A stretch of DNA of 64,000 bases from Octopus sinensis (GCF_006345805.1 NC_043018.1:23250001-23314000); one strand, 5' to 3'; shown: positions 12,761-62,135, numbered from the stretch's first letter. Notes: generated from the letters alone by a model not told the origin. Made by a program: numbers and translations.

Positions 12761-13308
12761 TCCACAAACATGGGATTTTCTGAATGGCACATCTCTGCCT
12801 AGTGATGTGCTGTGTCGCATGTGGCCTGCTTCTTGAAAAAAAGGTTGCCCTTTCCTCAGTTAGAGCATTGGTTTCAATTTGGTGAGTGTTTTGTTTTTGG
12901 AGGCTTTTCTTCCACAGCACTTGACCGAAAAGGTTCCTTGCCCTAAACCAGCTTCATATCCTGGAGTAAACTTAACCACCACATTCTACAGCAGGAGTTC
13001 TCAACCATTTTTTATTCTTGGACTCTTTCGATTACTATTCTCTTCTGTTGGATCCCCATATCTGTTCAATGTTTAAAAACTAGTTTTATAAATGCTTCTT
13101 TTGAAATTTCTGTTTCGTTTTTCACCAGTGCTGCATAAACACACCTGTGATGGTAACATGTAAAAAAGCACCCAGCGCACTCTAAGTGGTTGGCATTAGG
13201 AAGGGCATCCAGCCATAGAAACCACAATAATGTCCAATTGTCTAACCCAGTCCAGCATGGAGACTGGATGTTAAACAATGATCATATGTGTAGGTTGAAC
13301 TATGTTAA

Positions 13309-20083: not shown

Positions 20084-20408
20084 CAGTGGTTCTCAACTGG
20101 GGAGGGGGGTCCATGTGGCCCCTGAGAGTCCATACAAGATTTTGTAGGGTCCACAATAGTATTTTAAGAGTCCATGAAAAAATTTAGCTTTAGATGTATG
20201 TATTGGTATGTACTGCAATAAAATAGGTTTTTTCTCTAACATTTTACGTTGTTCAACTTACAAAAGTTAATGTGTGAAAAACGCAATAGGAATTTTGAAA
20301 GCAGTTCCTACAAAACTAGTTTTTAAGCATCAAATGATTATGGGAGTCCACCAGAATGAAATAGTAATCAAAGGGGTCCATAGATAAAAAAATTGTTGAG
20401 AACCCATG
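20084..20408. mobile_element. hAT (Charlie-like) MITE
   Basis: CAGTGGTTCTCAAC ... GTTGAGAACCCATG; 8-bp near-TSD ttctaccc/ttctacac; relatives at 35691-36457 and about 46525-46878. Confidence 0.8.
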
Positions 20409-20419
20409 TTCTACACGAT

Positions 20420-21348
20420 TCCCTTGATGTGACATAGATGCCAATTTAAAGAATGCCACAGTATTGAAATATGCAGACGACATCAAGCTGTACCTTGAAA
20501 TCAAGAGGACTGATCCTGATGTCTACAACTCTTCCTGCAATCAGACCTAGACACAATGCAGCAATGGATCACAGACTGGCAACTGAAACTGGCTGTGGAC
20601 AAGTGTACTACCATGCATTTTGGGAGAAAAAACCCTGCGTCCACATACTCCCTCCACAACACTGATATCAAGAAATCCTCTTGTGAGCGTGACCTAGGCA
20701 TCACTGTCAGCAGTGATTTGCGTTGGACAAAGCATATCTCTAAAATTGTCAAGAAGGCCGAGGGTGTCTTGGCATCACTCAGCAAGACTTTTGTTAGCCG
20801 CTCTCCAGCTATCTATTTAAAACTGTATACAGCTATGGTACGACCACACTTGGAATTCGCATCATCAGTTTGGAATCCCTATCTTGCTCAGAACATTGAC
20901 CTCCTGGAATCTGTCCAGAGACGTGCAACCAAACGCATACCCTCCATCAGACACCTACCATATTCTGAGCGCCTTGTTTCCCTGGGCATGGATTCACTGA
21001 AGCTTCGGCGTCTGGCGACGGACTTGGTAAACACCCACAAGGTTATCAACCACCTCACCAACAACAACACTGAACACCTTTTTGATCTCCATGTGTCTAA
21101 CACACGTGGACATGCCTACAAAGTCAGAAAACAGCACAGCTCCCATGACTTTCGGAAACATTTTTTCACGCTCAGGGTTGCTGAAGCGTGGAATAAACTG
21201 ACTGCGTCAGTTGTTGACTGCCATGACACTGCATCCTTTAAGGCCCTCATGCTTTCCGAAATCCACCGAAACTACACCTGATTATATATACACTTTCGAT
21301 GAGTTGTAGTGCACCTGAGCACTGTACACAATTATTATTATTATTATT
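20420..21348 (+). mobile_element. 5'-truncated CR1-type LINE (RT C-terminus, 241-aa ORF 20556-21281)
   Basis: YADD at 20470 before a frameshift; ERDLGI, VRPHLEFASSVWNPY, LESVQRRATK, TRGH, FTLRVAEAWNKL motifs; (ATT)n tail. Confidence 0.95.
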
Positions 21349-27720: not shown

Positions 27721-28405
27721 GGTTCGTTCTTCACTCATTTATTTTACTGTTCGTATTTTAACCCGTGTCCATTGTCTGAAAATCTTTCGTCACACATCTG
27801 TGACCTCTTCAGTGATGCATTTCGTCCCCGTACATGCCCCTGCCCGCAGAAAACTGTTTAAAAAGAAACTTGGTTTTGGTGGTGTGTGTGTGGAGAAACC
27901 CCCCCACACACGCGCGTAACCTCAACGCCGTCGCTCGAACGATATCTTTAGAAATAGCAACGGCATCTCCCTCAAATCACGCCCTGTCGCCTTTGAAGCA
28001 CACCTACTCAATCGCATCCCCACTTCTGAATTCGTTTCCTCATAACTCTCAGAAAAAATTGATAGTCTTTTAATGAAATTTTCTAAAATACCTTTCAGAT
28101 GACGTAGATTCCGATTATATCGGAATTTAATGCGGAAAAAAAAAATTGGGACGGGGGTGAGGGGTTCCGGATAATTCATACGAGTCGACTTTGTTTCCTC
28201 ATAACTTTCAAGCAGGCAGATATTTTAAAAGTAATTTTACTCAAATACCTTTCAGGTGGTGTATACTACGATTACATCGAAAATTAGTGTGTGTGCTAGT
28301 GGGTATGGTAGGCGCGTACGCATACATACTGATACACGTCACATAATTTTTTCAAAATTTTACTTTCAGTTTGTACATGGTTGTGTTTGTGTACGCGCCC
28401 ATCAA

Positions 28406-33521: not shown

Positions 33522-35928
33522 ACCCCTTTGTTCTGTTTATGTTCTGTCTGTTTCTGTCTATCTTTCCTGTCTGTACCCATTTGTGCCTCTATGCAACAAT
33601 TAGCAACGCAAATTTAAATTCAGAATGATAGAATTATGCAACTTTGGTGCTCCCTTTCTTGACTAAAAAGATCTTGCTTGCTACACATGCTAGAACTCAT
33701 CTATGAAAAAACCTCATTTTCTTTGTCTTCCTGAATATTGCCACCAAAGTGCATCAAGCATCTTAGCTACTTTTTCAGGGCCAGTATTTAACAATGAGCT
33801 ATTAATGATTATCTAAAAGGCTTAAGATCCTTTGTTCTCATATTATCTGTCGCTGTATTCAGAAATATGTCATTCACCATTTGTTTTGTTTCTTATAATC
33901 TTCATATTCCTGCGGTTTCTTCATTTGTCTTTTACTATAACCATCTACCTGATCACTCTCAACCTCTCTCCTGCTTTGGCCTTTCTCTCATACCCTAACC
34001 CCTCGTTGCATAACAAAGTCACCCCACTGGCTAGGTGGGCAGACCAATATTCTCCTTGAACAGAACACTATTCCACCACAGGGTTACCCATTTACAGCTG
34101 AGCGGACTGGAGTAGCATAAAATGAAGTTTTGCTCAAGAATGCAAAATACTACTCAGTCTGGAAATTGAAACCATGACCACAAGGTCATGAGTGCAGCAG
34201 CCTAACCACTAGGCCACACATCCTCACAATTGACATAACCCAATCTCTGCTCTACAAACATGTTGTCATCTCTCTGCCTTTTTCTATTGTTACTTTGATG
34301 GCGTCTATTCCTCAGAATTGGCTCAACTCGTGCCACCGCCACTCATCTCTCCCGCCCTACTCATTCATCTCTTGTCACTCAAGTGACCTCATCAGTAAGC
34401 CTTGTAACCTACAATCCTTACACCAACTGCTGTTCACAATCCTTCCTTCCCAGAGTGTCAATCCTCTGGAATTCCCTCCTCACTCAGGAGTTTTCTATAG
34501 GTGTCAGAATGTCAATGGTATCAGTCTCATTGATTTGCAAGGGCCTATAGCGGTCATGCACACAACCCCTTGCTCTGGATCTAGCAAATACAAGAGAGAA
34601 AAAAAACAAGGTTTAATTTTATCATGACTGTCATTGTTTGAGTGAGTAAACCAAGTTTTATAATTATTCTATGGTTGAGCTACTAACAGTGGAAAAAAAG
34701 CAGCTAGCCATGAATAATATGGGGTCAATTAAAAGCATTTCATTCAAGCCTTAGTTTGTATAAATGTGTGCAAAGTATTTTGTGAAGAAAAACTTCTGTT
34801 GCTCTGAAAGCCGAGCTTAAAACAAGCTACCATATGACTATGCTCTTTTCTGCATTACATTGGTAGAATTAAATAAATTATTGGGGCACGTAAAAAGCAC
34901 CATCTGAACGTGGCCGATGCCAGTACCGCCATGACTGGCTTCCGTGCCAGTGGCACATAAAAAGCACCAACCGATCGTGGCCGTTGCCAGCCTTCCCTGG
35001 CATCTGTGCCGGTGGCATGTAAAAAGCACCCACTACAATCACAAAGTGGTTGGCATTAGGAAGGGCATCCAGATGTAGAAACACTGCTAGTTTTGACTGG
35101 AGTCTGATGTAGCCTCCTGGCTTCCCAGACCCTGGTCGAACCGTCCAACCCATGCTAGCATGGAAAACGGACGTTAAACGATGATGATGATGAGAGTCAA
35201 GCTGAATAGCTTCAGAGATAAGGACATCGGATATCACACTTTGAATCTGTTTGAAGCCTATCGTTATAATCTTCAAATCTAAAGCCTGTAGTTGTATTGA
35301 TCTTAGAGCATAGGCTTTAGACTTGCCTATCTTTGCATGTGGAGACTGGATCTGGCAAACTCTGTGGAAGAAACCTTGATGCCTCAACAGAGAATGTGGC
35401 TGCAATAACTCCTTATGGAATCCAGAGGGCTAGATGAAGCAAGCAAGACATTTGGTCATCCATCTGTCTTCATCCCTTGACTTAGTTTTGTCACTGGACT
35501 GAAGATCTGAAGATGGTCATGGATGAGAAAGTGAGGTTGGCAACGTGCAACTCTTCTTCTCTTTAAATAAAGTCATTACATAAAGTCATCAGTCATCTCC
35601 AGGCTTACCAGATGGTCATCATCAATCTGACAAACATTCATAGCATAAGATTTAGTGGTTTAGGGTCTATAACATAACCATTGCCCAGTACAGTGGTTCT
35701 CAGCTGGAGTCTGTATGGCCCCTGGGGTGCATATAAGATTTTTGGGGGTTCATGAAAGCAAAATAGTAAATTGGGGACCCACAGTAGTATATTAAGGGTC
35801 CATAAAAAATTTTGCTTTGGATGTAATTATTGCAAGAAACAGGTTTTACATAGTTCAACCTACAAAAGTTAATGTGAGAAAAGCAAAATAGGGATTTTGG
35901 AAGGAGTTTCTATAAAACTAGTTTTTAA

Positions 35929-36147: not shown

Positions 36148-37429
36148 TTAAACATCAAATGGCAATGGGAGAAGGGGTACCAGAATAAAATAGTAATCAA
36201 AGGTGTCCATGGATAAACAAAAATGGTTGAGAACCCCTGCTTTAGATGGATGTATTGCAAGAAACAGGTGGGTTTCTTCCTCGAACATTTTACACAGTTC
36301 AACTTAAACAGGTTAATGTGTGGAAAACAAAAGAGGAAATTTGAAAGAAGCTTTTACAAAACTAGTTTTTAAACATCAAATGGCTGTGGGAGTATACCAG
36401 AATAAAATAGTAATCAAAGGGGTCAATAGATAAAAAAAAGATGATTGAGAACCACTGCTCTAGTGCTTATAATACAGGTTTTGGTTGTCCGAGTGTAGGC
36501 TCTGGTTGTTGGGTGCCCTTAGTGTGAGCTTTAGTTGTCGAGTGCCTGTAGCACAAATTGTAATGGTCCTGTGTGTATAGTATAGTGTTTAGAACCTGTG
36601 GGGAAGACATGGTTGGTTGATCAATAACTATAATTGCATTTTTATTGGCATTTACCTTCGAGGCTAAACTGACATTTGAACTTGGGATCTGAGTAACCAA
36701 ATCCAGCTGATATGCGTTAATGACTAAATGAGAACAAATCTCAATTAGTTTGAATGTTCTACTGGTATAGACATGAAGATCTTTAGATCTGGTGACCATT
36801 ATTGAGGCCTGATTTGATGATAAAACCATAGCTGGGGTGCACCTACAGCGCAGGTTTTAGCTGGGGTGCACCTACAGCGCAGGTTTTAGCTGGGTTGTGC
36901 TTATAGTGCAAGCTTCAGCCTGGTTGCACCAACAGCACAAGCTTTAGCTTGACATACTTATAGCATATAATGCAAGCTTTAGCCATGTTGTACTTCTTGC
37001 ACAGGAGTTAGCTGTCCCATACTTTGACTATACTACCACCCTCATTAAGTCGAGCAATGCGATATTTAATTACAAGAAATTGTCGTAAACAGCTGGAGGT
37101 CAAAGTTGATTTAACCTAAATTATTTAAACTCCTCATCTCTGGGCTTCATGTCTAGAACTAGAGATGGTGAAATTTGAGGTCATGTTGTCAATTTCTGTG
37201 AAAGGCACCAGTGTTGTACATGAACTTTCTACAACTGACAAGTCAGTTGTACATACTAAATTATCTTTCATTCTTCCACTAGTAACGTGTCAGTGACCAG
37301 CCCTGCTTCTTTGATACAAAACCCTTTTACTTCACTCTTTTGCATTTAAACTGGCCATATCTGGCCCAAATATTCTACCAGTTTTGTGTTAAAAGTGACC
37401 AAATCCAACATTTCACACCTACCCTACAA

Positions 37430-38841: not shown

Positions 38842-38959
38842 ATCCTAGCAAGAATGTGTCTGAAGTTTGGGTATCACGTCAAAAGCTGGAGGATCTTTAC
38901 AAGAAGCTGCTGATAATGGATTTAGAATATGCTTTGGACAAGAAAGTGGAACAAGACCT
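38842..38959 (+). CDS. SMG7: SMG7 exon (118 nt), DPSKNVSEVWVSRQKLEDLYKKLLIMDLEYALDKKVEQD(L)
   Basis: ctgttttag acceptor, gtaagt donor; DLEYALDKKVEQDL matches the SMG7 signature as I recall it. Confidence 0.97.
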
Positions 38960-39085
38960 GTAAGTAACGTCTTTGGACACTTCTTTTACCCCTGTCTTAT
39001 TGTCTGCATTCTGCTTAAACATCTCCTTTCTGGGGACTTTTCTGTGCATTTCGTATTGGAGGTGTGTGTGTTATATATGTATATA

Positions 39086-45117: not shown

Positions 45118-45178
45118 GTGGAACCATGCTTTCAAAAATCAAATTAACACCCTTCAAACTCAAGCTAAGGACAATCAG
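45118..45178 (+). CDS. SMG7: SMG7 exon (61 nt), WNHAFKNQINTLQTQAKDNQ
   Basis: tctctccag acceptor, gtgagg donor; contains the Lys equivalent to human K66 of the phospho-UPF1 binding pocket. Confidence 0.97.
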
Positions 45179-45345
45179 GTGAGGGTATGGACGCATCTTT
45201 TATATATATTTTTTATTTTTTTACATCCTATTGTGTTCTTTTTTTTAAAGAAATACTTTTACCTATGGCCTTTGAGATCAGTGACGAAAAGTTACTGGAA
45301 AAATGATATAAGTATTTGCATTGGGACCCCTTTCATCGAAAACCG

Positions 45346-45404
45346 GTGATTGTCGTACGCTGATGACAGGTCAATACCTAGAAACTGCAGTCCGTGCGTA
45401 TCAC
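45346..45404 (+). ncRNA. Type I hammerhead ribozyme motif, intact core, intronic and sense to SMG7
   Basis: Stem I CGTACG/CGTGCG plus distal GTGAT/ATCAC; core CTGATGA (45360-45366); stem II AGGT-CAAT-ACCT; GAAA (45381-45384); stem III AC-T..A-GT around palindromic CTGCAG; GTC cleavage triplet ending at 45392. Confidence 0.8.
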
Positions 45405-48400
45405 TTAGGTTGACGAAGGAAGGATGACCTCCCTTTGGAAATACCTTAAGGGCACAGAAAGTGCGCCTAAAGCCAGCTGGATGAGATGTTCTCCTGGGGC
45501 TACAAGCTACAGTAACACCCACCCTTAGTGGTTAGCCATATTGAGATGGCAAATATACCCTCCTTTTTTTTCTATTTATTAAAGAGATACAAAAAAAGAT
45601 GCTTTTTTTTGGTGTACTCTTAGAAGAGTGGGAGTGGGGACAATTTCGTCTTGCTTGTGGTGGTGGTGGTGGTGGTGGTGGGTAGAATCAGAGGAGGTAG
45701 GGCCCTGTAAAAGGTGTTAACTGTAAGGTGTATAGGTAGTTGAAACAGAGGGGAGAGGACCATGTGAAGAGGTTGCAGAATCAGTGGAATGGTCAGAAGG
45801 TTCTGTAAAGGGTGGTGGCTTTCAGAACGAGTGGAGTGGAGGACAAAATTCCTTCTGGTGTTCATGTCTTGCATTCACCCTCTAAGTAAAGATCCCCTTC
45901 AGAATAGACTTTGATATCTCATTCTTCTTGAATCTATAGAATAAATTTACCCACCATATTCTGGGTCCAGTTTAATCAACTATTTATCCCCATTAGCTCT
46001 AATTTCAGTTAAAAAATATATTTATTAGCAACAGAGGCAATAATAATACCAAGAGGTAATATTTATCCCCACTCAAACATGGTTGTTATGTTAGAACAAA
46101 CTATACTGCATGAGATAGCCTGAGAGAAACTCTCACATTGACTTCTTGGTCATATGGACCCGGGCGCTGGTGTCACAATTAGTTAGTTATCTTGTTAAAA
46201 ATATATATATATATATTAGTGACGGGGGCAGTAATAATACCAAAAGCTAATATTTATCGCCACTTGAAAGTTGATGTTCTGTTAGAACAAACTATACTGC
46301 GGTAGATACCATGAGAGAGACACTCATATTGGCTTTTGGTGTAAAATGCACTTTTGTTTATATTGCTGGTGGGGAGATAAATCCCTGCTACCTCCAGCAC
46401 CAAGACCACCAGATCACTTGATTTCAACCTTGTTTGGTCTTGTCAATGACGGCCACTCAACTTCTAGAGGCAGCAGTGATTCTTTTCCCTGCCAGTATTA
46501 TATAGATTGACAGTGCCAGAATAGGCGGTTCTCAACCATTTTTTACCTAAGGACCCCTTTGATTAGTATTTTATCTTGGTGGACCCCCATAGCCATTTGA
46601 TGCTTAAAGATTAGTTTTATAGAAACTTATTTCAAAATTCCTATTTTGTTTTTCACACGTTAACTTGTCGCAGGTTGAACTGTGTAAAATGAGAAAGAAA
46701 CCACGCTGTTTCTTGCTTCAAATACACCCACAGTAACATTTTTTTTCACGAACTCTTAAAATAGTACTGTGGATCTCCAACTTACTATTTTGCTTGCGCA
46801 GACCCCAAAAGTCTCACATGGACTCCCAGGAGTCGTATGAATCCCAGGAGTCATATGAATCCCAGTTGAGAACCACTGACCTAACATAAAGCCACCCCTC
46901 TCAAAGTACACCCCACCTCAACACTCCCCACACGCCACACACACTTGTGAAGGCTTGTCATGCAAGTTACCAGTTCACCTCACTGGTGCCAGCGCTATGC
47001 AAAACATTCCCACTTCGCTCTGTAAAGTGGTTCTCAGCAACAATTCGAGACAAAAGTATTTTATGAGATGATTCAGTGGTTATAGTGTCGGGCTCACAAT
47101 CAATGAAATAGTGAGTTCAATCCTCAAACCGGACTGTGTGTTGTGTTCTTGAGCAAGACCCTTTATTTCTCGTTGCTCCAGTTCACTCAGCTGTTGAAAT
47201 AAGCTGCGATGTCACTGGTGCCAAGCTGTATCAGCCTTTGCCTTCCCCTTGGTGTATAGAGGGGAGGCTGGTATGCATGGGTGACTGCTGGTCACCCATA
47301 AACAACTTTGCCTGGACTTGGGCCTCAGAGAGGAAACTTCTAGGTGCAATCCCATGGTCATTCATGACCAAAGTGGGTCCTATTCCTTGACACATTTTTT
47401 CCAGCTGGAATAACTATGTATCCTGCTTTACAACGAAATACCTGTTACTGTCCCCCCCACCATTGTACTTTGACCATCCCATCACTTAGAATAACACCTC
47501 CTCCCTCACTACCCCGCTCCCCAGATGAGGTTGTTTTGTCTTGCAAGTTACTTGGTGACCTGACTGGTGCCAGTGCTATGTAAAAAATGACCCAGTCTAT
47601 TCTGTAAGGTGGTCAGTGTTAGGTAAGAATGCCAGACATAGAAGCCATGCCAAAAGCAGACATGGAGTTTGGTGCAATGTTCGGGCATGCCAGTTCCTGT
47701 TGAACCATTTCACCCATTCCAGTACAGAAAACACGTGTTAAAGAAACAAATTCAAAATAGATAGAATTGTAGGTTCTCTGTTGTGTTGTTTAACCCCTTC
47801 GTTACCAACCCGGCTGAAACCGGCTCTGGCTCTGAGTACAAATGTCTTGTTTTCATAAGTTTTGAATTAAAATCTTCCACGAAACCTTAGTCACAATTTA
47901 TGTTCCTAACACTAGCTGAATGATAACTAAGTTATTTTACTAAATTCTTTGATATATTTAAAGTAATTGAAAGAAACACAGAGCATCTCAAAAGAAATAT
48001 GGCAACCAAAGGGTTAACAAATGCTTAATTTACCCCTTTCAATACAAAACCAGCTGAAACCACCTCTGGTTCTGTAGTACTAATGTTTTGTTTTGAAACA
48101 CAGAGCATCTCAAAATATATACAGTAACGAAAGGGTTAATAAATAACACAATTGATTGGCAAGAAATAACAATAGGGTTTCAAGTTCTCTCAGTGGGTCT
48201 GTCATTGCTTTTTATTTCTGTCTCAAAACCAGTGTTTCTAATACCTTAGAGCAACTTCCCAGTAAACACAGTGTAGGTTGTGTAAACACAAATAAAGCCA
48301 AATGGCTTCTAATTCAGCAGCAGAGCTTTTGTTCTTGTTCAACTCCTCAGCTCAGTCATGATGGTCTTTTCAGAATTGAGCATTGTGTATCTAGGAATAC

Positions 48401-50105
48401 ATTAACCCTTTTGTTACCATATTTCTGTTGAAGTATCCTGTCTTTGTCTCAATTCATCATCATCATCATCATCATCGTTTAACGTCCGTTCTCCATGCTA
48501 GCATGGGTTGGACGGTTCAACTGGGTTCTGGGAAGCCAGAAGGCTGCACCAGGCCCAGTCTGATCTGGCAGTGTTTCTACGGCTGGATGCCCTTCCTAAC
48601 GCCAACCACTCCATGAGTGTAGTGAGTGCTTTTTTTTGTCTGAATTAATTTTGTCTCAATTAATTTTGAAAATAATGAGGAATACAAATTAACATGGAAT
48701 TTTAACAGATTTTAATTTAGATCAACTTTAACACACAGAATTTGTATCATAAGACTGAAGGTGGTTTCAGGTGGGTTTGTATTAAAAGGGTTAACCAAAG
48801 TCTCCTTTTTTTTTTTTTTTTTTTCATGGTAGTCAGGTTGAAACCTTTAGCACTCAGATTATTCTGTCAAATGCAATGCTTATTTATTCACATTGTTTAG
48901 AATTCATCATGCATTATCTAATTGCGTTTCAGACTTCAGTGATGAGATTTATATTTAGAATGGCATTGTAGGGTAGGTGCAATAAGCTGGATCTGGATGG
49001 TTTAAATGCTAAAAGGTTAATTTGATGGCAGTTTGGCTGCCATTTTTAATACATTGAGCAACCACAAAGAGCAAAGATAGGGAACCCCTTGCTTGCAGAT
49101 GAAATTTTTCTAGCATCAACATTTTCACCCTTCCACTAACAAAATCTCTAAGTGTTTGAGTTACATGAGAAGGCTTTAGGGTAACCATTTATTTGGGTTC
49201 AGTCCCACTGCATAGCACCTTGGGCAAACATCTATTGTAGCCCTGGTCTGACCAAAGTCTTGTGAGCAGATTTGGTGGATGGAAACTGAAAGAAGCCCAT
49301 CGAATATATGTGTGTGTATATGTATATAAGTGTATGCATATGTGTATGAGTGTGTGTGTGTATGTATGTATATATACTTTTTTTAATTAAAGCTGTAAAA
49401 ACATGATGTTTTTGTAGGTTTAATAAAAAAGCCTATTACTCTACCTTTGGTAATTGAGTACTATATTTTACCACTTTGTTTTGCATTCATATACTTACTT
49501 GTATGTGTGTGAGAGTCACTGTCTTCTTGTCTTCACATCACATGATGGTTAGAAGCAAGTTCATGCAAATGGTGTCCAAGGGGAAATATTTCCTTATTTG
49601 GAAACGGGTGAGGGTCAGTAACTGAAACGGCATACAGCCCTGAAAATTCTACCTCCACAAATTCCATCTGACCTGTGCAAGCTTTGGAAAAGTGGATGTT
49701 ACGAAACGAAAACAATGACACCCAGTGAATTGCGAGAATGAAAACAATGACTCGCATTGTCATTCTTATTGTTAGTGCCTGGTAAGAAGTTTGCTTCCCA
49801 ATCACATGGTTATGAGTTCAGTCCCATTGTGTGGCACCTTGGGCAAGTGTCTTCTGCTATACCCTTGGGCCAACCAGTGAGGCCACAGCCTAATGGCTGA
49901 AATGTGTAAAAGATAAAAGGAAAGATGATCCGGCAGATTTGAACATGATTATATTAATCACTGTTGTATCTCATCATTGGAGAATAACTTCTCTTGTACG
50001 ACGAATGTTTTTAATTTCCTTCTGTGACTCCAGTTCGTGCCGATGTTATAAAATCAGTGATAATTTTGAGTATTGGCCATTTTTTTTATTCTCTTTTGTT
50101 CCCAG

Positions 50106-50177
50106 AATCCAAAAAGACTCGAAGTGCAAGCCAGCCTCAATCTGTTCCTTGAAACAGCAAGTGGGTTCTACCTTCAG
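50106..50177 (+). CDS. SMG7: SMG7 exon (72 nt), NPKRLEVQASLNLFLETASGFYLQ
   Basis: ttgttcccag acceptor, gttagt donor; phase 0-0; resembles human NPNRSEVQANLSLFLEAASGFYTQ. Confidence 0.96.
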
Positions 50178-57846: not shown

Positions 57847-58758
57847 TATATATATACACACATGCATATATGGGTACAGGTCATCAAAAAAACCTTGAAC
57901 ATAATGAGAAAGGAAAACATCAAAACAAAAACATAGAAACGAACTTTTTGGGGAACATTGGAAAAAACAAACAGAGAAATGAGACATGCAACAAAAAGAA
58001 TATTCCCCTTCTTCAGTTGTCCCTGTTTCATCTACTCCGCATTTCGAAGGCAAGGACAATATATAATATATATATATATATATATATAAGAAATTAAAAA
58101 AGGAAAATATGCACACTTACATAGTTTTAATATAATTTTTAATATATCGACTGGTTTCGCTATCGCTATTCATGATCATGAATAATCGTGGGGATAATCG
58201 AAATTCCTCTTTTCTGTTACTACTACTATTTATATATATGTATATGCATGAAGCCATAGAAACCATGCCAAATCAGATTGGAATCTGGTGCAGCCACTTG
58301 GCTTACCAGCTTTGGTCAAACTGTCCAACCCATGCGAGCATGGACAGTGGACATTAAATGATGATGATGATAGTGAGGGTGCATGGTCTAATGGTCTGGG
58401 TGTTGTGCTCATGAAAGCAAGATTGCAGAGTGGTGCGTTCTTGAGCAGAACACTTCACCTTCTATTGCTCTGTGCTCGCTTCAACACTTGATGTGTGGTG
58501 CACTGTGCACCTGTTGAGGAGACGTCAATTTGAAGGAGAGAGTGAGCTACTATGCTGCAGAAACATTTGATCACTATAAACAAAATGTCATCAGTGCAGG
58601 TTGTTCAGCATGAAATTGCAGGACCCTCATCTGTTGTTTTTTTTTTTTTTTTGTCTTTTTTTATAGGAGAATCCAACATGTGTGTTTGGGGTGTATGTAG
58701 AGAAGCATTTATACAGGAAGACATAAACCAATTTTGTTTCTGTTGATTCAATTTTCAG

Positions 58759-59151: not shown

Positions 59152-59609
59152 TCCGCCTTCTTTCTTTCCTTTCCTGAGTGTCCAATAACACTATATTTGT
59201 TCCACGTCATCGTGTTGTGTTTTCTTGTTTGGATTAACTTTATTGATATATATATATATATATATATATATAGGTTAATATTCTCCAAAGCACGTCTCCC
59301 TTCTCCTCGAAATTATCACCCATGCAAGGGTCATTACTAATTTCTTAGGTTCTTATGTGACATTTGGCTACCCTGGTAACTGTTCCTCTGGAATTTTCCT
59401 TGTAAATTAAACACACACACACACTTTCCTCACCTTTCATAACCTGTTGTATTTGTCTTGCCCGACCCACATCTTGGCATGAATGCTAAAATGTTGAACA
59501 AAATGCTTCTGTGGCATTTAATAGCACTCTGTTTTGATATTGAATCTTGCTTGGGCTGGCTTTACAATTCCTTCTTTTGAGGTCAATAAAGTAAAGTACC
59601 AGCAAGTAG

Positions 59610-59965
59610 TTTTCAAACTCCACCCGTCTAACACCCGTGGACATGTTTACAAAGTCAGAAAACAGCACAGCTCCCATGACTTTAGGAAACATTTTTTCAC
59701 GCTGAGAGTTGCTGAAGCATGGAACAAACTGCTGGCATCAGTTGTTAGTTGTTGGAGCACTGCATCCTTCAAAACTTCCATGCTTTCTGAGATTCGCCAA
59801 CACTACACCTGATTTTCTCCCCTCCATACACACACAAACATGTATGTGGCTCATACATTGTTCGCTTTCCAGACATTTGTACATTACTGCATATACTTTA
59901 TATGCACTCTCTGACAAGTTGTGGTGCACCTGAGCACTGTATACAATAATTTCATTATTATTATT
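59610..59965 (+). mobile_element. CR1-type LINE 3' fragment, same family as 20420-21348
   Basis: SNTRGHVYKVRKQHSSHDFRKHFFTLRVAEAWNKL and the same 3' UTR ending in (att)n. Confidence 0.92.
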
Positions 59966-61049: not shown

Positions 61050-62135
61050 CCCTTTCGTTACTATATTTCTGACCAAATTACACCCCTTATGTGTTTCAAT
61101 TAATTTCTAACGTAATCATAAATTTAGTCTGGTTTCATTAAACAACTATAACTTTTTTATTTATCGATATATCAATCTGATTTTTGGAAGATAATTTAAT
61201 GAAATATTCTCAACCAATTCTATACTATAATTTTTGTTACAAAGTGACTCTAATTGCAGGTAGATACAGGTAAATTCCACAAAATATAAAATTATTAAAA
61301 TTTTGTTCAAACATCGCTATAGAAAATGGGTTATTAGCTAATATTCAATTGGGTATACAACAAAATTTTACGATAGAATTTGTTATTCTGGGTAACTTTC
61401 TGATACCCATAATAATATTTACGGCAAAATAGTCTTAATTTCATTTAAGGTTGAGGGAAACCACAAACTATCGTTTCTTTTGCTTTGTTTACGTTTAGCG
61501 TAACGGTTCATCTCCGCTGTAATGATTTCAAATAGGCTCATTCGAAAAAGTAAATAGAAATAGTCTAAGGCTTTACTCTTCTGGGAAAGTCTGTGGCTTG
61601 GTCCAGTTTCTTCAGAGAAATCACCGAAAGAAACAGTTTTTAAATTTTCACTCCATTCAGGTGCCAATTCGTTTTCTTTATCGCTATCGGAGATCTCAGA
61701 TTCACTGTTTTCACTTTCGGAAAATGAAACATCAGATTCATTATCAAATACCACATGCTTTTTTTTTTCAGTCATAGAGTTAGATTTATGAAGGTCTTCA
61801 GTAGAAAATCCTTCGAATTCTGACTCGCTGCTTGATATAATGAAATTCGTATCCATTTTTTGTCAGAATTACAAATTTTGAAAACACAATAGGAACAAAT
61901 TTCGGAAAAAAATCTCCCAAAATTCAAGGAATTAAAATTACACTTCGATTATTGTACAAAACTGTAGTTGAACTGTTTACGAAGTATAATACGTGTTTTC
62001 ACGAATGTACTGAAGAGATTTGCTCTGATATTATCATTTAAATATGAATAGGTAAATTCGGGCGGCTTTGGGCGGTTTGGTTTCATAAACCAAAATTTTG
62101 TTCGGGCGGCTTTGGGCGGTTTGGTAACGAAAGGG
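61050..62135 (-). mobile_element. Internally deleted piggyBac transposon with transposase N-terminal remnant (ORF 61419-61856)
   Basis: TTAA TSDs; 12-bp TIR CCCTTTCGTTAC; acidic N-terminus then W..F..GP..LDYF.L..I..EMNRYA..W..T..EIK; 25-bp subterminal direct repeats at 62057 and 62101. Confidence 0.92.

What the first reader, a model, noticed from the sequence alone, without database searches (positions are those of the whole stretch)
45346..45404. Intact-core type I hammerhead ribozyme in the sense strand of an SMG7 intron
Seen: GTGAT-tgt-CGTACG-CTGATGA-c-AGGT-CAAT-ACCT-a-GAAA-CTGCAG-TC|CGTGCG-t-ATCAC. All conserved core nucleotides and a GUC triplet are present. Stem I has 6 bp (one G-U), an asymmetric internal loop and 5 more bp. 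Loop II reads (U)CAAU(A), resembling the loop-bulge tertiary contact of fast Schistosoma-type hammerheads. Deviations: a C-A mismatch closes stem II, and stem III is a short palindrome (CUGCAG) that may need a dimer. It is a solo copy, keeps several CpGs in CpG-poor surroundings, and the predicted cut lies 214 nt into the intron. Known: conserved intronic hammerheads exist in amniote genes, and retrozyme/Penelope hammerheads occur in invertebrates. Inference: co-transcriptional self-cleavage could affect splicing or abundance of an NMD factor, or this is a young retrozyme-like insertion.
Basis: partly seen in the sequence, partly recalled or inferred. Interest (0 to 1): 0.85.

Follow-up and report, generated by a model that had tools for sequence, protein, structure and literature searches.

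The report
Retroelement-type hammerhead ribozyme in octopus SMG7 intron
A real hammerhead self-cleaving RNA motif of the kind carried by animal "retrozyme" or Penelope-like mobile elements lies in an intron of an octopus-like SMG7 gene; it looks like a single, slightly damaged mobile-element copy, not a device that regulates the gene.

Summary
It lies on the sense strand of an SMG7 intron (45179/45185-50105), with the predicted cut at 45392/45393. All core nucleotides and the type I layout typical of animal hammerheads are present: 6-bp helix I, a 3x1 internal loop, a 4-pair helix II and a 2-bp helix III with a palindromic loop. My descriptor found only this site in the window and none in 45 Mb of simulated sequence.

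A metagenome contig (L001) carries a tandem ~530-nt repeat whose hammerhead is the closest intact relative found. That relative has a proper G10.1-C11.1 pair. Here the position is a C.A mismatch.

Rfam hammerhead models do not detect the site. A model built from four tested retrozyme hammerheads gives only 15.6 bits. The motif caps a 140-nt hairpin that is more stable on the sense strand. As a monomer it prefers a non-catalytic fold; as a dimer it forms an 8-bp helix III.

A second, unrelated hammerhead (U3-A8 core variant) lies 1 kb downstream on the opposite strand.

Verdict: a solo copy of a hammerhead-bearing retroelement, probably a weak cleaver. A host function is neither shown nor excluded, because orthologous introns could not be fetched. 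New member of a known kind; modest interest.

The parts
45354..45398 (+). Hammerhead #1 catalytic domain (type I). Helix I 5' strand 45354-45359; core CUGAUGA 45360-45366; C45367; helix II AGGU 45368-45371, loop CAAU 45372-45375, ACCU 45376-45379; A45380; GAA 45381-45383; helix III/loop 3 ACUGCAGU 45384-45391; C17 45392; helix I 3' strand 45393-45398.
   Evidence: Read directly. Only descriptor hit in the window; 0 hits in 45 Mb simulated sequence. Model R1 gives 15.6 bits, E 0.041. 35/43 identical to the L001 tandem-repeat hammerhead.
45392..45393 (+). Predicted self-cleavage site, 3' of C17 in the GUC triplet.
   Evidence: Inferred from the hammerhead numbering. Not tested experimentally.
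45309..45448 (+). Long imperfect hairpin that extends helix I, with the hammerhead at its tip. This is the minimal extent of the inserted element.
   Evidence: MFE -47.7 kcal/mol, z -4.24 on the + strand, against -36.7 and z -1.58 on the - strand. The 301-nt context gives z -3.83.
45118..45178 (+). SMG7 exon upstream of the host intron (..LWNHAFKNQINTLQTQAKDNQ). An alternative donor 6 nt downstream would end the exon at 45184.
   Evidence: tblastn; splice sites read; alignment to A. hians SMG7.
50106..50177 (+). SMG7 exon downstream of the host intron (NPKRLEVQASLNLFLETASGFYLQ).
   Evidence: tblastn; acceptor and donor read.
46406..46452 (-). Hammerhead #2, a separate and unrelated element, antisense to SMG7: CCGUCA UUGACAA GACC AAACAA GGUU GAAA UCAAGUGA UC UGGUGG. 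It has the U3-A8 core covariation, G.U at 10.1-11.1 and a 3-bp helix III.
   Evidence: Best hit of model R1 in the window, 22.7 bits, E 3.4e-4. Rfam HH9 is the only family reported, 15.7 bits, far below the gathering score of 52.
46365..46495 (-). Long hairpin carrying hammerhead #2 at its tip.
   Evidence: MFE -55.7 kcal/mol, z -4.87 on the - strand and z -4.82 on the + strand.

Best explanation
Positions 45354-45398 are a genuine type I hammerhead ribozyme motif of the lineage carried by animal non-LTR retrozymes and Penelope-like elements. It sits at the tip of a ~140-nt RNA hairpin (45309-45448) that was inserted, in sense orientation, into an intron of an Octopus-like SMG7 gene.

In its home element such a ribozyme cuts multimeric transcripts 3' of C17. 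The C17 2'-OH attacks in line, leaving a 2',3'-cyclic phosphate and a 5'-OH. Two neighbouring copies usually pair their palindromic helix III to form the active dimer.

This copy is alone. Its helix III has only 2 bp. The helix II junction has C.A where the nearest intact relative has G10.1-C11.1. In the SMG7 pre-mRNA it is therefore most likely a poor cleaver or inactive, and a passenger with no host role.

Shown: the motif, its architecture, its gene context, the strand-specific hairpin and the existence of an intact tandem-repeat relative.
Inferred: retroelement origin, weak activity and lack of host function.
For: - Motif and helices read directly. Unique descriptor hit in the window; 0 in 45 Mb simulated.
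- Architecture matches the published definition of canonical metazoan hammerheads: helix I 6 bp, helix II 4 bp, helix III 1-2 bp with a small palindromic loop, acting as dimers (PMC4209133).
- The same 6-bp helix I plus 3x1 internal loop with a 3' U occurs in the axolotl Ax353 and Ax330 hammerheads. The same 2-bp plus palindromic tetraloop helix III occurs in mussel Mg353. I parsed these from PMC7229834 Suppl. Table 2.
- Relative L001: three tandem ~530-nt units, 94% identical to one another, each with a hammerhead sharing the core, the unpaired C after A9, GGUC, CUGCAG and GUC|CGUGC. R1 scores it 26.1 bits. Its circular monomer folds with z -4.2.
- The hairpin is far more stable on the sense strand.
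- The monomer MFE is a non-hammerhead fold (-18.1 against -11.1 kcal/mol; helix II pair probability ~0.07). The two-copy cofold adopts the double hammerhead with an 8-bp helix III (-39.1).
- A second, unrelated hammerhead hairpin lies 1 kb away on the other strand. The intron therefore collects such elements.
- Precedent for a mismatch at the base of helix II: axolotl HHR_Amex2 (U.U) cleaves 22% in 1 h as a monomer and much better as a dimer (PMC7229834).
- Hammerhead_1 loci are already reported in a cephalopod genome: 235 in the giant squid (PMC6962438).
Against: - No Rfam hammerhead family reports the site even at E<=10 on 81 nt. L001 and hammerhead #2 do get weak HH9 hits.
- R1 gives only 15.6 bits. 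A site that lacks GAAA (58554-58600) scores the same.
- No other copy was found in the window, in 41 kb of other Octopus DNA plus 21 kb of other cephalopod DNA, or through a protein-level search with a translated frame. Repeat-family membership is therefore not demonstrated.
- No tandem arrangement. No significant target-site duplication. No RT or endonuclease ORF nearby.
- Only the ribozyme, not the flanks, resembles L001.
- Sense orientation, closeness to the 5' splice site, retained CpGs and the strand-specific fold would also fit a selected RNA.
Confidence: 0.65

Rival explanations
1. Domesticated intronic ribozyme. Like HH9 and HH10 in amniote introns, the hammerhead is kept by selection. 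It cleaves nascent SMG7 pre-mRNA about 210 nt after the exon and so tunes splicing or the level of this NMD factor.
For: - Sense strand, close to the 5' splice site.
- Intact catalytic core.
- CpG observed/expected 1.12 in the motif against 0.32 in the intron.
- Hairpin stable only on the sense strand.
- Precedent: type I hammerheads conserved in RECK, CTCL and DTNB introns of amniotes (PMC6155905).
Against: - C.A replaces the G10.1-C11.1 pair that the nearest intact relative has.
- The monomer misfolds and helix III needs a partner.
- No Rfam hit.
- The CpG excess is not extreme (8.7% of windows).
- A neighbouring antisense hammerhead element argues for a passive landing site.
- Conservation is untested.
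- From general knowledge, slow intronic ribozymes barely affect splicing (exon tethering).
Confidence: 0.07
2. Remnant of a Penelope-like element insertion complex. The two hammerheads on opposite strands (45354-45398 + and 46406-46452 -) are what is left of pseudo-LTRs of truncated, inverted PLE copies.
For: - PLE hammerheads lie in pseudo-LTRs. Pairs on opposite strands 100-700 bp apart, and the U3-A8 core variant, are described for PLE-derived motifs (PMC4209133).
- An unpaired nucleotide after A9 is a PLE-hammerhead trait, and C45367 fits it.
- PLEs often carry an inverted truncated copy (PMC8557442).
- No hammerhead was found in 62.6 kb of other cephalopod DNA, so two within 1.1 kb looks non-random.
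Against: - The flanks of the two hammerheads share no similarity in either orientation.
- No RT or GIY-YIG remnant in the intron ORFs.
- Hammerhead #1 has the canonical (retrozyme-type) helix III and loops, not the minimal PLE form.
- The spacing is ~1 kb.
Confidence: 0.15
3. A member of a still active small retrozyme family. The ~140-nt hairpin, or a larger unit, is transcribed (here within the SMG7 pre-mRNA), self-cleaves, is circularised by a tRNA ligase and retrotransposes.
For: - Retained CpGs and a strand-specific rod-like fold.
- Invertebrate retrozymes are 170-400 nt, highly self-paired and highly expressed (PMC7229834).
- The dimer fold is favourable.
Against: - A single copy gives one cut only, so no unit-length RNA can be released.
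- The helix II junction is defective.
- No other copies were seen in the DNA available.
Confidence: 0.1
4. Chance resemblance: a sequence that happens to satisfy a hammerhead descriptor.
For: - Weak covariance-model scores.
- Genome-wide scans of gigabases can yield a few descriptor hits by chance. My rough estimate is ~1e-10 to 1e-9 per position.
Against: - 0 hits in 45 Mb simulated sequence.
- Features outside the descriptor: the 3x1 loop geometry shared with tested hammerheads, a palindromic loop 3, the long sense-specific hairpin, and 81% identity over 43 nt to a tandem-repeat hammerhead found with a 24-base pattern whose chance expectation I estimate well below 1.
Confidence: 0.03

Closest known systems
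Type I hammerheads of metazoan non-LTR retrozymes (coral Amil224, mussel Mg353, axolotl Ax353/Ax330; Cervera and de la Pena 2020, PMC7229834)
   Same: Identical core. 6-bp helix I followed by a 3x1 internal loop with a 3' U (as in Ax353 and Ax330). 4-pair helix II. Helix III of 2 bp plus a palindromic tetraloop (as in Mg353 and Ax353). A mismatch at the base of helix II has a precedent (U.U in Ax353). GC below 50%. Self-paired flanks.
   Different: Not in a tandem array. No second copy seen. C.A at 10.1-11.1. Flanks unrelated to any retrozyme sequence available here. Copy number and circular RNA unknown.
Metagenome tandem repeat L001 (JGI11756J13266_100240), an uncharacterised retrozyme-like array
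   Same: The hammerhead is 35/43 identical: ACGCUGAUGAC, GGUC, the AUA of loop 2, GAAACUGCAGUCCGUGC. Both have unpaired nucleotide(s) after A9 and the same helix III palindrome.
   Different: L001 has two unpaired nucleotides (CU), then a proper G10.1-C11.1 and a 6-nt loop 2. Its units are ~530 nt and tandem. The rest of the unit shows no similarity to the window. Its host organism is unknown.
Minimal hammerheads of Penelope-like elements (Cervera and de la Pena 2014, PMC4209133)
   Same: An unpaired nucleotide between A9 and helix II. Palindromic 15.2-16.2 and loop 3. Mostly solitary, heterogeneous copies. Pairs on opposite strands. The U3-A8 core variant (seen here in hammerhead #2).
   Different: PLE motifs typically lack helix III and the loop-loop geometry, have a longer helix II (6-8 bp) and keep G10.1-C11.1. 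No PLE ORF is present here.
Amniote intronic hammerheads HH9/HH10 (RECK, CTCL, DTNB; Rfam RF02275/RF02277)
   Same: A type I hammerhead in the sense strand of an intron of a protein-coding gene. The HH9 consensus has the same layout (seen in the alignment).
   Different: Those are deeply conserved and match their Rfam models. This site gets no Rfam hit, its conservation is untested, and its helix II junction is defective.

Membership tests
Hammerhead ribozyme, type I | Conserved core C3 U4 G5 A6 N7 G8 A9 / G12 A13 A14 / A15.1-U16.1 / H17 | tested here: met
   All present at 45360-45366, 45381-45384, 45391 and 45392.
Hammerhead ribozyme, type I | Three helices around the core, with helix I open-ended | tested here: met
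   Helix I 6 bp, helix II 4 bp, helix III 2 bp. Found by the descriptor. Helix I pair probabilities >0.9.
Hammerhead ribozyme, type I | G10.1-C11.1 pair closing helix II (highly conserved) | tested here: not met
   C45367 opposite A45380. The nearest relative, L001, has G-C. A natural precedent for a mismatch here exists (U.U in axolotl HHR_Amex2).
Hammerhead ribozyme, type I | Helix I bulge and loop 2 geometry for the tertiary contact | tested here: inconclusive
   The geometry (6 bp, then a 3x1 internal loop; loop 2 UCAAUA if the U-A pair opens) equals that of Ax353 and Ax330. Whether the specific contacts form cannot be judged from sequence.
Hammerhead ribozyme, type I | Match to Rfam hammerhead clan models (RF00163, RF02275 and others) | tested here: not met
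   No hit at gathering score nor at E<=10 on 401 or 81 nt. As a control, the clearly genuine L001 hammerhead also stays below gathering score (24.9 against 52 bits).
Hammerhead ribozyme, type I | Site-specific self-cleavage | not testable with these tools
   Needs in vitro transcription or end mapping.
Metazoan non-LTR retrozyme | Short tandem repeats (150-450 bp), each with a type I hammerhead | tested here: not met
   Single copy. No tandem array.
Metazoan non-LTR retrozyme | Low GC and a highly self-paired RNA | tested here: met
   GC 0.45-0.47. Hairpin z -4.24, specific to the sense strand.
Metazoan non-LTR retrozyme | Multicopy family in the genome; circular RNA expression | not testable with these tools
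   The source genome is not searchable here. There are no copies in 41 kb of O. sinensis and O. vulgaris DNA.
Penelope-like element pseudo-LTR hammerhead | Association with an RT plus GIY-YIG ORF flanked by direct repeats | tested here: not met
   No Pfam RT or endonuclease in the seven intron ORFs of at least 70 aa. No flanking direct repeat beyond chance.
Amniote-type domesticated intronic hammerhead | Conservation at the orthologous intron position across distant species | not testable with these tools
   The A. hians and cuttlefish SMG7 genes span 100.6 and 169 kb, so no DNA was returned.

The most novel reading that the evidence does not exclude
The hammerhead is an octopod-specific domesticated ribozyme whose regulated, possibly factor-assisted or dimer-dependent, co-transcriptional cleavage of SMG7 pre-mRNA sets the level of an NMD factor. 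This would be an invertebrate counterpart of the amniote HH9/HH10 intronic ribozymes.
Probability: 0.06. Interest if true: 0.75.

Novelty: new member of a known kind. Interest (0 to 1): 0.3.

Why it matters
Hammerheads of retrozymes and Penelope-like elements are already known to be widespread in animal genomes, molluscs included, and Rfam-type hits have been reported in a squid genome. One more copy is therefore not surprising.

Three things give it modest value:
- It documents canonical and U3-A8-variant type I hammerheads in an octopus genome, embedded in ~130-140-nt hairpins that Rfam's thresholds miss.
- It offers a natural C.A variant of the 10.1-11.1 pair for testing how much that pair matters in a tertiary-stabilised hammerhead.
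- It is a sense-strand intronic copy in an NMD gene. If it proved conserved, it would be the first invertebrate example of a domesticated intronic hammerhead.

Tried and rejected
- Rfam, at gathering score and at permissive E-values: no hammerhead at the site.
- blastn of 45200-45700 against the window: only low-complexity matches.
- Exact look-up of two ORFs next to or over the motif: not on record.
- HMMER search of 1.84 billion representatives with the minus-frame translation across the motif: only spurious bacterial repeat proteins.
- Pattern scans:
  - viral contigs: 0 hits;
  - prokaryotic genome contigs: 0 hits;
  - first metagenome pattern: 0 hits; the second gave L001.
- Orthologous introns:
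  - The SMG7 search with a 207-aa query returned only short, non-cephalopod proteins.
  - Repeating the query four times recovered full-length cephalopod SMG7, but the gene ranges exceed 100 kb, so no DNA was returned.
  - L002 holds only a C-terminal SMG7 exon region of a decapodiform-like contig.
- Target-site duplication: the 45236-45256 / 45570-45590 repeat is not above the background of this low-complexity region; ~7.5 such matches are expected.
- Hammerhead-like string at 27778-27812 (-): no helix I or III partner. Rejected.
- 58554-58600 (-): CUGAUGA with helices I and II but AUCA in place of GAAA, and no stable context (z +1.27). A relic or chance; left open.
- MAFFT alignment of the seven hammerheads misaligned the cores, so no pair counting was done on it.
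- The repeat next to hammerhead #2 (46527-46700, five other copies in the window) ends before the hammerhead and is unrelated to it.

Full report
**1. The observation**

In hammerhead numbering:
- core C3-A9 = 45360-45366 (CUGAUGA);
- G12 A13 A14 = 45381-45383;
- A15.1 = 45384, U16.1 = 45391, C17 = 45392.

The predicted cut is therefore between 45392 and 45393.

The helices are as follows:
- Helix I has 6 pairs (45354-45359 with 45393-45398, one U.G). A 3x1 internal loop follows (UGU opposite U), then six more pairs (45345-45350 with 45400-45405).
- Helix II is AGGU/ACCU with loop CAAU, flanked by C45367 and A45380, which cannot pair.
- Helix III is A-U plus C-G around UGCA. ACUGCAGU is a perfect 8-nt palindrome.

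**2. Gene context**

tblastn with a recalled human SMG7 sequence places SMG7 exons on the + strand at 38859-38960, 45119-45178, 50106-50177 and further downstream. I read the splice sites directly. The spliced N-terminus is 98% identical over 245 aligned positions to Argonauta hians SMG7. The motif is thus in the sense strand of the intron 45179-50105, 214 nt from the donor. The A. hians protein carries two extra residues (VR), which correspond to a donor 6 nt further on. With that donor the distance is 208 nt.

The window is Octopus-like:
- A LINE ORF has its best hits in O. sinensis and O. vulgaris.
- The window shares 89 megablast repeat matches (79-98% identity) with loci from those two genomes.

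**3. Is it more than chance?**

I wrote a type I descriptor: 6-bp helix I, CUGANGA, helix II of at least 4 bp with an optional mismatch at its base, GAAA, at least one extra helix III pair, and UH.
- It finds only this site on both strands of the window.
- It finds nothing in 45 Mb of first-order Markov sequence with the window's composition.

Covariance models are much less favourable:
- No Rfam hammerhead family reports the site at gathering score, or at E<=10 when only 401 or 81 nt are searched.
- I built model R1 from four experimentally tested retrozyme hammerheads whose sequences are printed in Supplementary Table 2 of PMC7229834.
- Searched over the whole window without filters, R1 gives the site 15.6 bits (E 0.041). 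A site that lacks GAAA (58554-58600) scores the same.

So the case rests on the descriptor, on features outside it, and on a relative. It does not rest on model scores.

**4. Features outside the descriptor**

*(a) Architecture.* It matches the published definition of the canonical metazoan hammerhead: helix I 6 bp, helix II 4 bp, and helix III 1-2 bp capped by a small palindromic loop, working as a dimer (PMC4209133). Parsing the four reference sequences shows:
- The same 6-bp helix I plus 3x1 internal loop with a 3' U in both axolotl ribozymes (UUC/U and UGC/U, against UGU/U here).
- The same 2-bp plus palindromic tetraloop helix III in mussel Mg353 (ACGCGCGU) and axolotl Ax353 (ACACGUGU).

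*(b) Hairpin.* The motif caps a long imperfect hairpin, 45309-45448.
- On the sense strand it folds at -47.7 kcal/mol (z -4.24).
- On the opposite strand it reaches only -36.7 kcal/mol (z -1.58).
- This fits an element shaped at the RNA level.

*(c) Folding as monomer and as dimer.*
- As a monomer, the thermodynamic optimum is not the hammerhead: -18.1 against -11.1 kcal/mol, with helix II pair probability about 0.07 and helix III about 0.
- Two copies cofold into the double hammerhead with an 8-bp intermolecular helix III, at -39.1 kcal/mol.

**5. A relative**

A 24-base pattern spanning the helix I-proximal bases, the core, helix III and the cleavage site found one metagenome contig, L001.
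- It holds three tandem units of ~530 nt, 94% identical to each other.
- Each unit carries AGCACG CUGAUGA cu GGUC CAGAUA GACC GAAA CUGCAG UC CGUGCU.
- R1 scores these 26.1 bits.
- Rfam's best family is HH9 at 24.9 bits, still below its gathering score of 52. Rfam thresholds therefore miss this lineage in general.
- The unit-length circle folds with z -4.2.

The L001 hammerhead is 35/43 identical to the finding. Beyond the forced pattern, this includes the unpaired C after A9, GGUC and the AUA of loop 2. The rest of the unit is unrelated to the window.

The comparison is informative. The relative has unpaired nucleotides after A9, a trait noted for Penelope-type hammerheads. After these it has a normal G10.1-C11.1 pair directly abutting G12. 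The finding has A-U at that position plus an extra A before G12, which is equivalent to a C.A mismatch. Its helix II junction is therefore aberrant relative to the nearest intact relative.

A mismatch there is not necessarily lethal. Axolotl HHR_Amex2 has U.U at that position. It cleaves 22% in one hour as a monomer, and far better as a dimer.

**6. A second hammerhead**

The best R1 hit in the window is not the finding. It is 46406-46452 on the minus strand (22.7 bits, E 3.4e-4): CCGUCA UUGACAA GACC AAACAA GGUU GAAA UCAAGUGA UC UGGUGG.
- It carries the U3-A8 covariation of the core, described for Schistosoma Penelope-like elements.
- It has G.U at 10.1-11.1 and a 3-bp helix III.
- It sits at the tip of a ~130-nt hairpin (z -4.87).
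- HH9 is the only Rfam family reported there (15.7 bits).
- It lies in the same intron, 1 kb downstream, antisense to SMG7.
- It has no sequence similarity to the first element.
- The repeat next to it (46527-46700, five other copies in the window) ends before it.

No hammerhead was found by R1 in 62.6 kb of other cephalopod DNA. Two within 1.1 kb is therefore unexplained. Two possibilities are a Penelope-type composite insertion, or a preference for the local microsatellites.

**7. What could not be established**

- Copy number in the source genome is unknown. There is no other copy in the window. There is none in 41 kb of O. sinensis and O. vulgaris DNA. A protein-level search with a translated frame gave none.
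- The element's boundaries are unknown. A candidate flanking repeat is not above background.
- No tandem array and no RT or endonuclease ORF is present.
- Conservation in orthologous introns, the decisive test for a host function, could not be run. The A. hians and cuttlefish SMG7 genes span 100.6 and 169 kb, so no DNA was returned.
- CpG retention is real but modest: observed/expected 0.94 in the hairpin against 0.32 in the intron, and 8.7% of windows have as many CpGs.

**8. Interpretation**

The most likely reading (about 0.65) is a solitary copy of a hammerhead-bearing non-autonomous retroelement. It is retrozyme-like and related to the ribozymes of Penelope-like elements. It landed in sense orientation in an SMG7 intron.

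In its home context the ribozyme processes multimeric transcripts, normally as a dimer through the palindromic helix III. Here it has no partner, a 2-bp helix III, a competing monomer fold and a broken 10.1-11.1 pair, so cleavage of the pre-mRNA should be slow or absent. From general knowledge of intronic ribozyme insertions (exon tethering), slow cleavage has little effect on splicing.

In vertebrates, retrozymes are reported to be depleted from introns (bioRxiv 10.64898/2026.07.22.740005). That fits with such copies being tolerated only when harmless.

The rivals are:
- a Penelope-type composite with the second hammerhead (0.15);
- a member of a still active small retrozyme family (0.10);
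- a domesticated regulator of SMG7 (0.07);
- chance (0.03).

**9. Novelty and verdict**

Type I hammerheads in animal retroelements are well known:
- 235 Hammerhead_1 loci were reported in the giant squid genome.
- Mussels carry about 5000 copies.

This is a new member of a known kind. It has a natural C.A variant at 10.1-11.1 and a neighbouring U3-A8 variant as minor points of interest. Interest 0.3. It would rise sharply only if the motif proved conserved in orthologous SMG7 introns.

Noticed in passing
window 46406-46452 (-), hairpin 46365-46495: A second type I hammerhead motif with the U3-A8 core covariation (UUGACAA), G.U at 10.1-11.1 and a 3-bp helix III, at the tip of a ~130-nt hairpin. 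It lies in the same SMG7 intron, antisense, 1 kb from the finding, and is unrelated in sequence. It is the best hit of my retrozyme-hammerhead model (22.7 bits), and Rfam HH9 gives 15.7 bits.
   Followed up: partly
window 58554-58600 (-): Hammerhead-like string CCUGCA CUGAUGA CAUU..AGUG AUCA .. UC UGCAGC. Helices I and II and the first core box are present, but GAAA is replaced by AUCA, and there is no stable context (z +1.27). It is either a decayed relic or chance.
   Followed up: partly
L001 1-1154 (metagenome contig JGI11756J13266_100240): A tandem array of ~530-nt units, each with an intact type I hammerhead, from an unidentified organism in an environmental sample. It looks like an undescribed retrozyme. 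Its hammerhead stays below Rfam's gathering scores.
   Followed up: partly
window 46527-46700, 20231-20404, 36286-36453, 35844-35928, 36148-36235, 12997-13125: A ~175-190-nt interspersed repeat family ending in ..AAAAAATGGTTGAGAACC (75-85% identical copies). One copy abuts the hammerhead #2 hairpin but does not include it.
   Followed up: partly
window 46016-46144 and 46207-46335: A local direct duplication of ~129 nt (81% identical, spacing 191) separated by an (AT)8 run, just downstream of hammerhead #2 on the minus strand. No other copies in the window.
   Followed up: no
window 45179-45186: Two possible donors for the SMG7 exon (GTGAGG at 45179, GTATGG at 45185). The Argonauta hians protein includes the two residues (VR) encoded between them, which suggests alternative or species-specific donor use.
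   Followed up: no
window 20556-21281 (+) and 59534-59812 (+): LINE-type reverse-transcriptase C-terminal ORFs (best hits are Octopus sinensis and O. vulgaris 'jockey-like' proteins, 75-79% identity). Pfam finds no domain in them.
   Followed up: partly
window 61419-61856 (-): An ORF inside an SMG7 intron with a weak, sub-threshold match to the piggyBac-type transposase family DDE_Tnp_1_7 (16.3 bits against a cut-off of 22.4).
   Followed up: no
tool behaviour: the search for homologous proteins returned only proteins up to about 1.7 times the query length. Full-length cephalopod SMG7 appeared only after the 243-aa query was repeated four times.
   Followed up: yes
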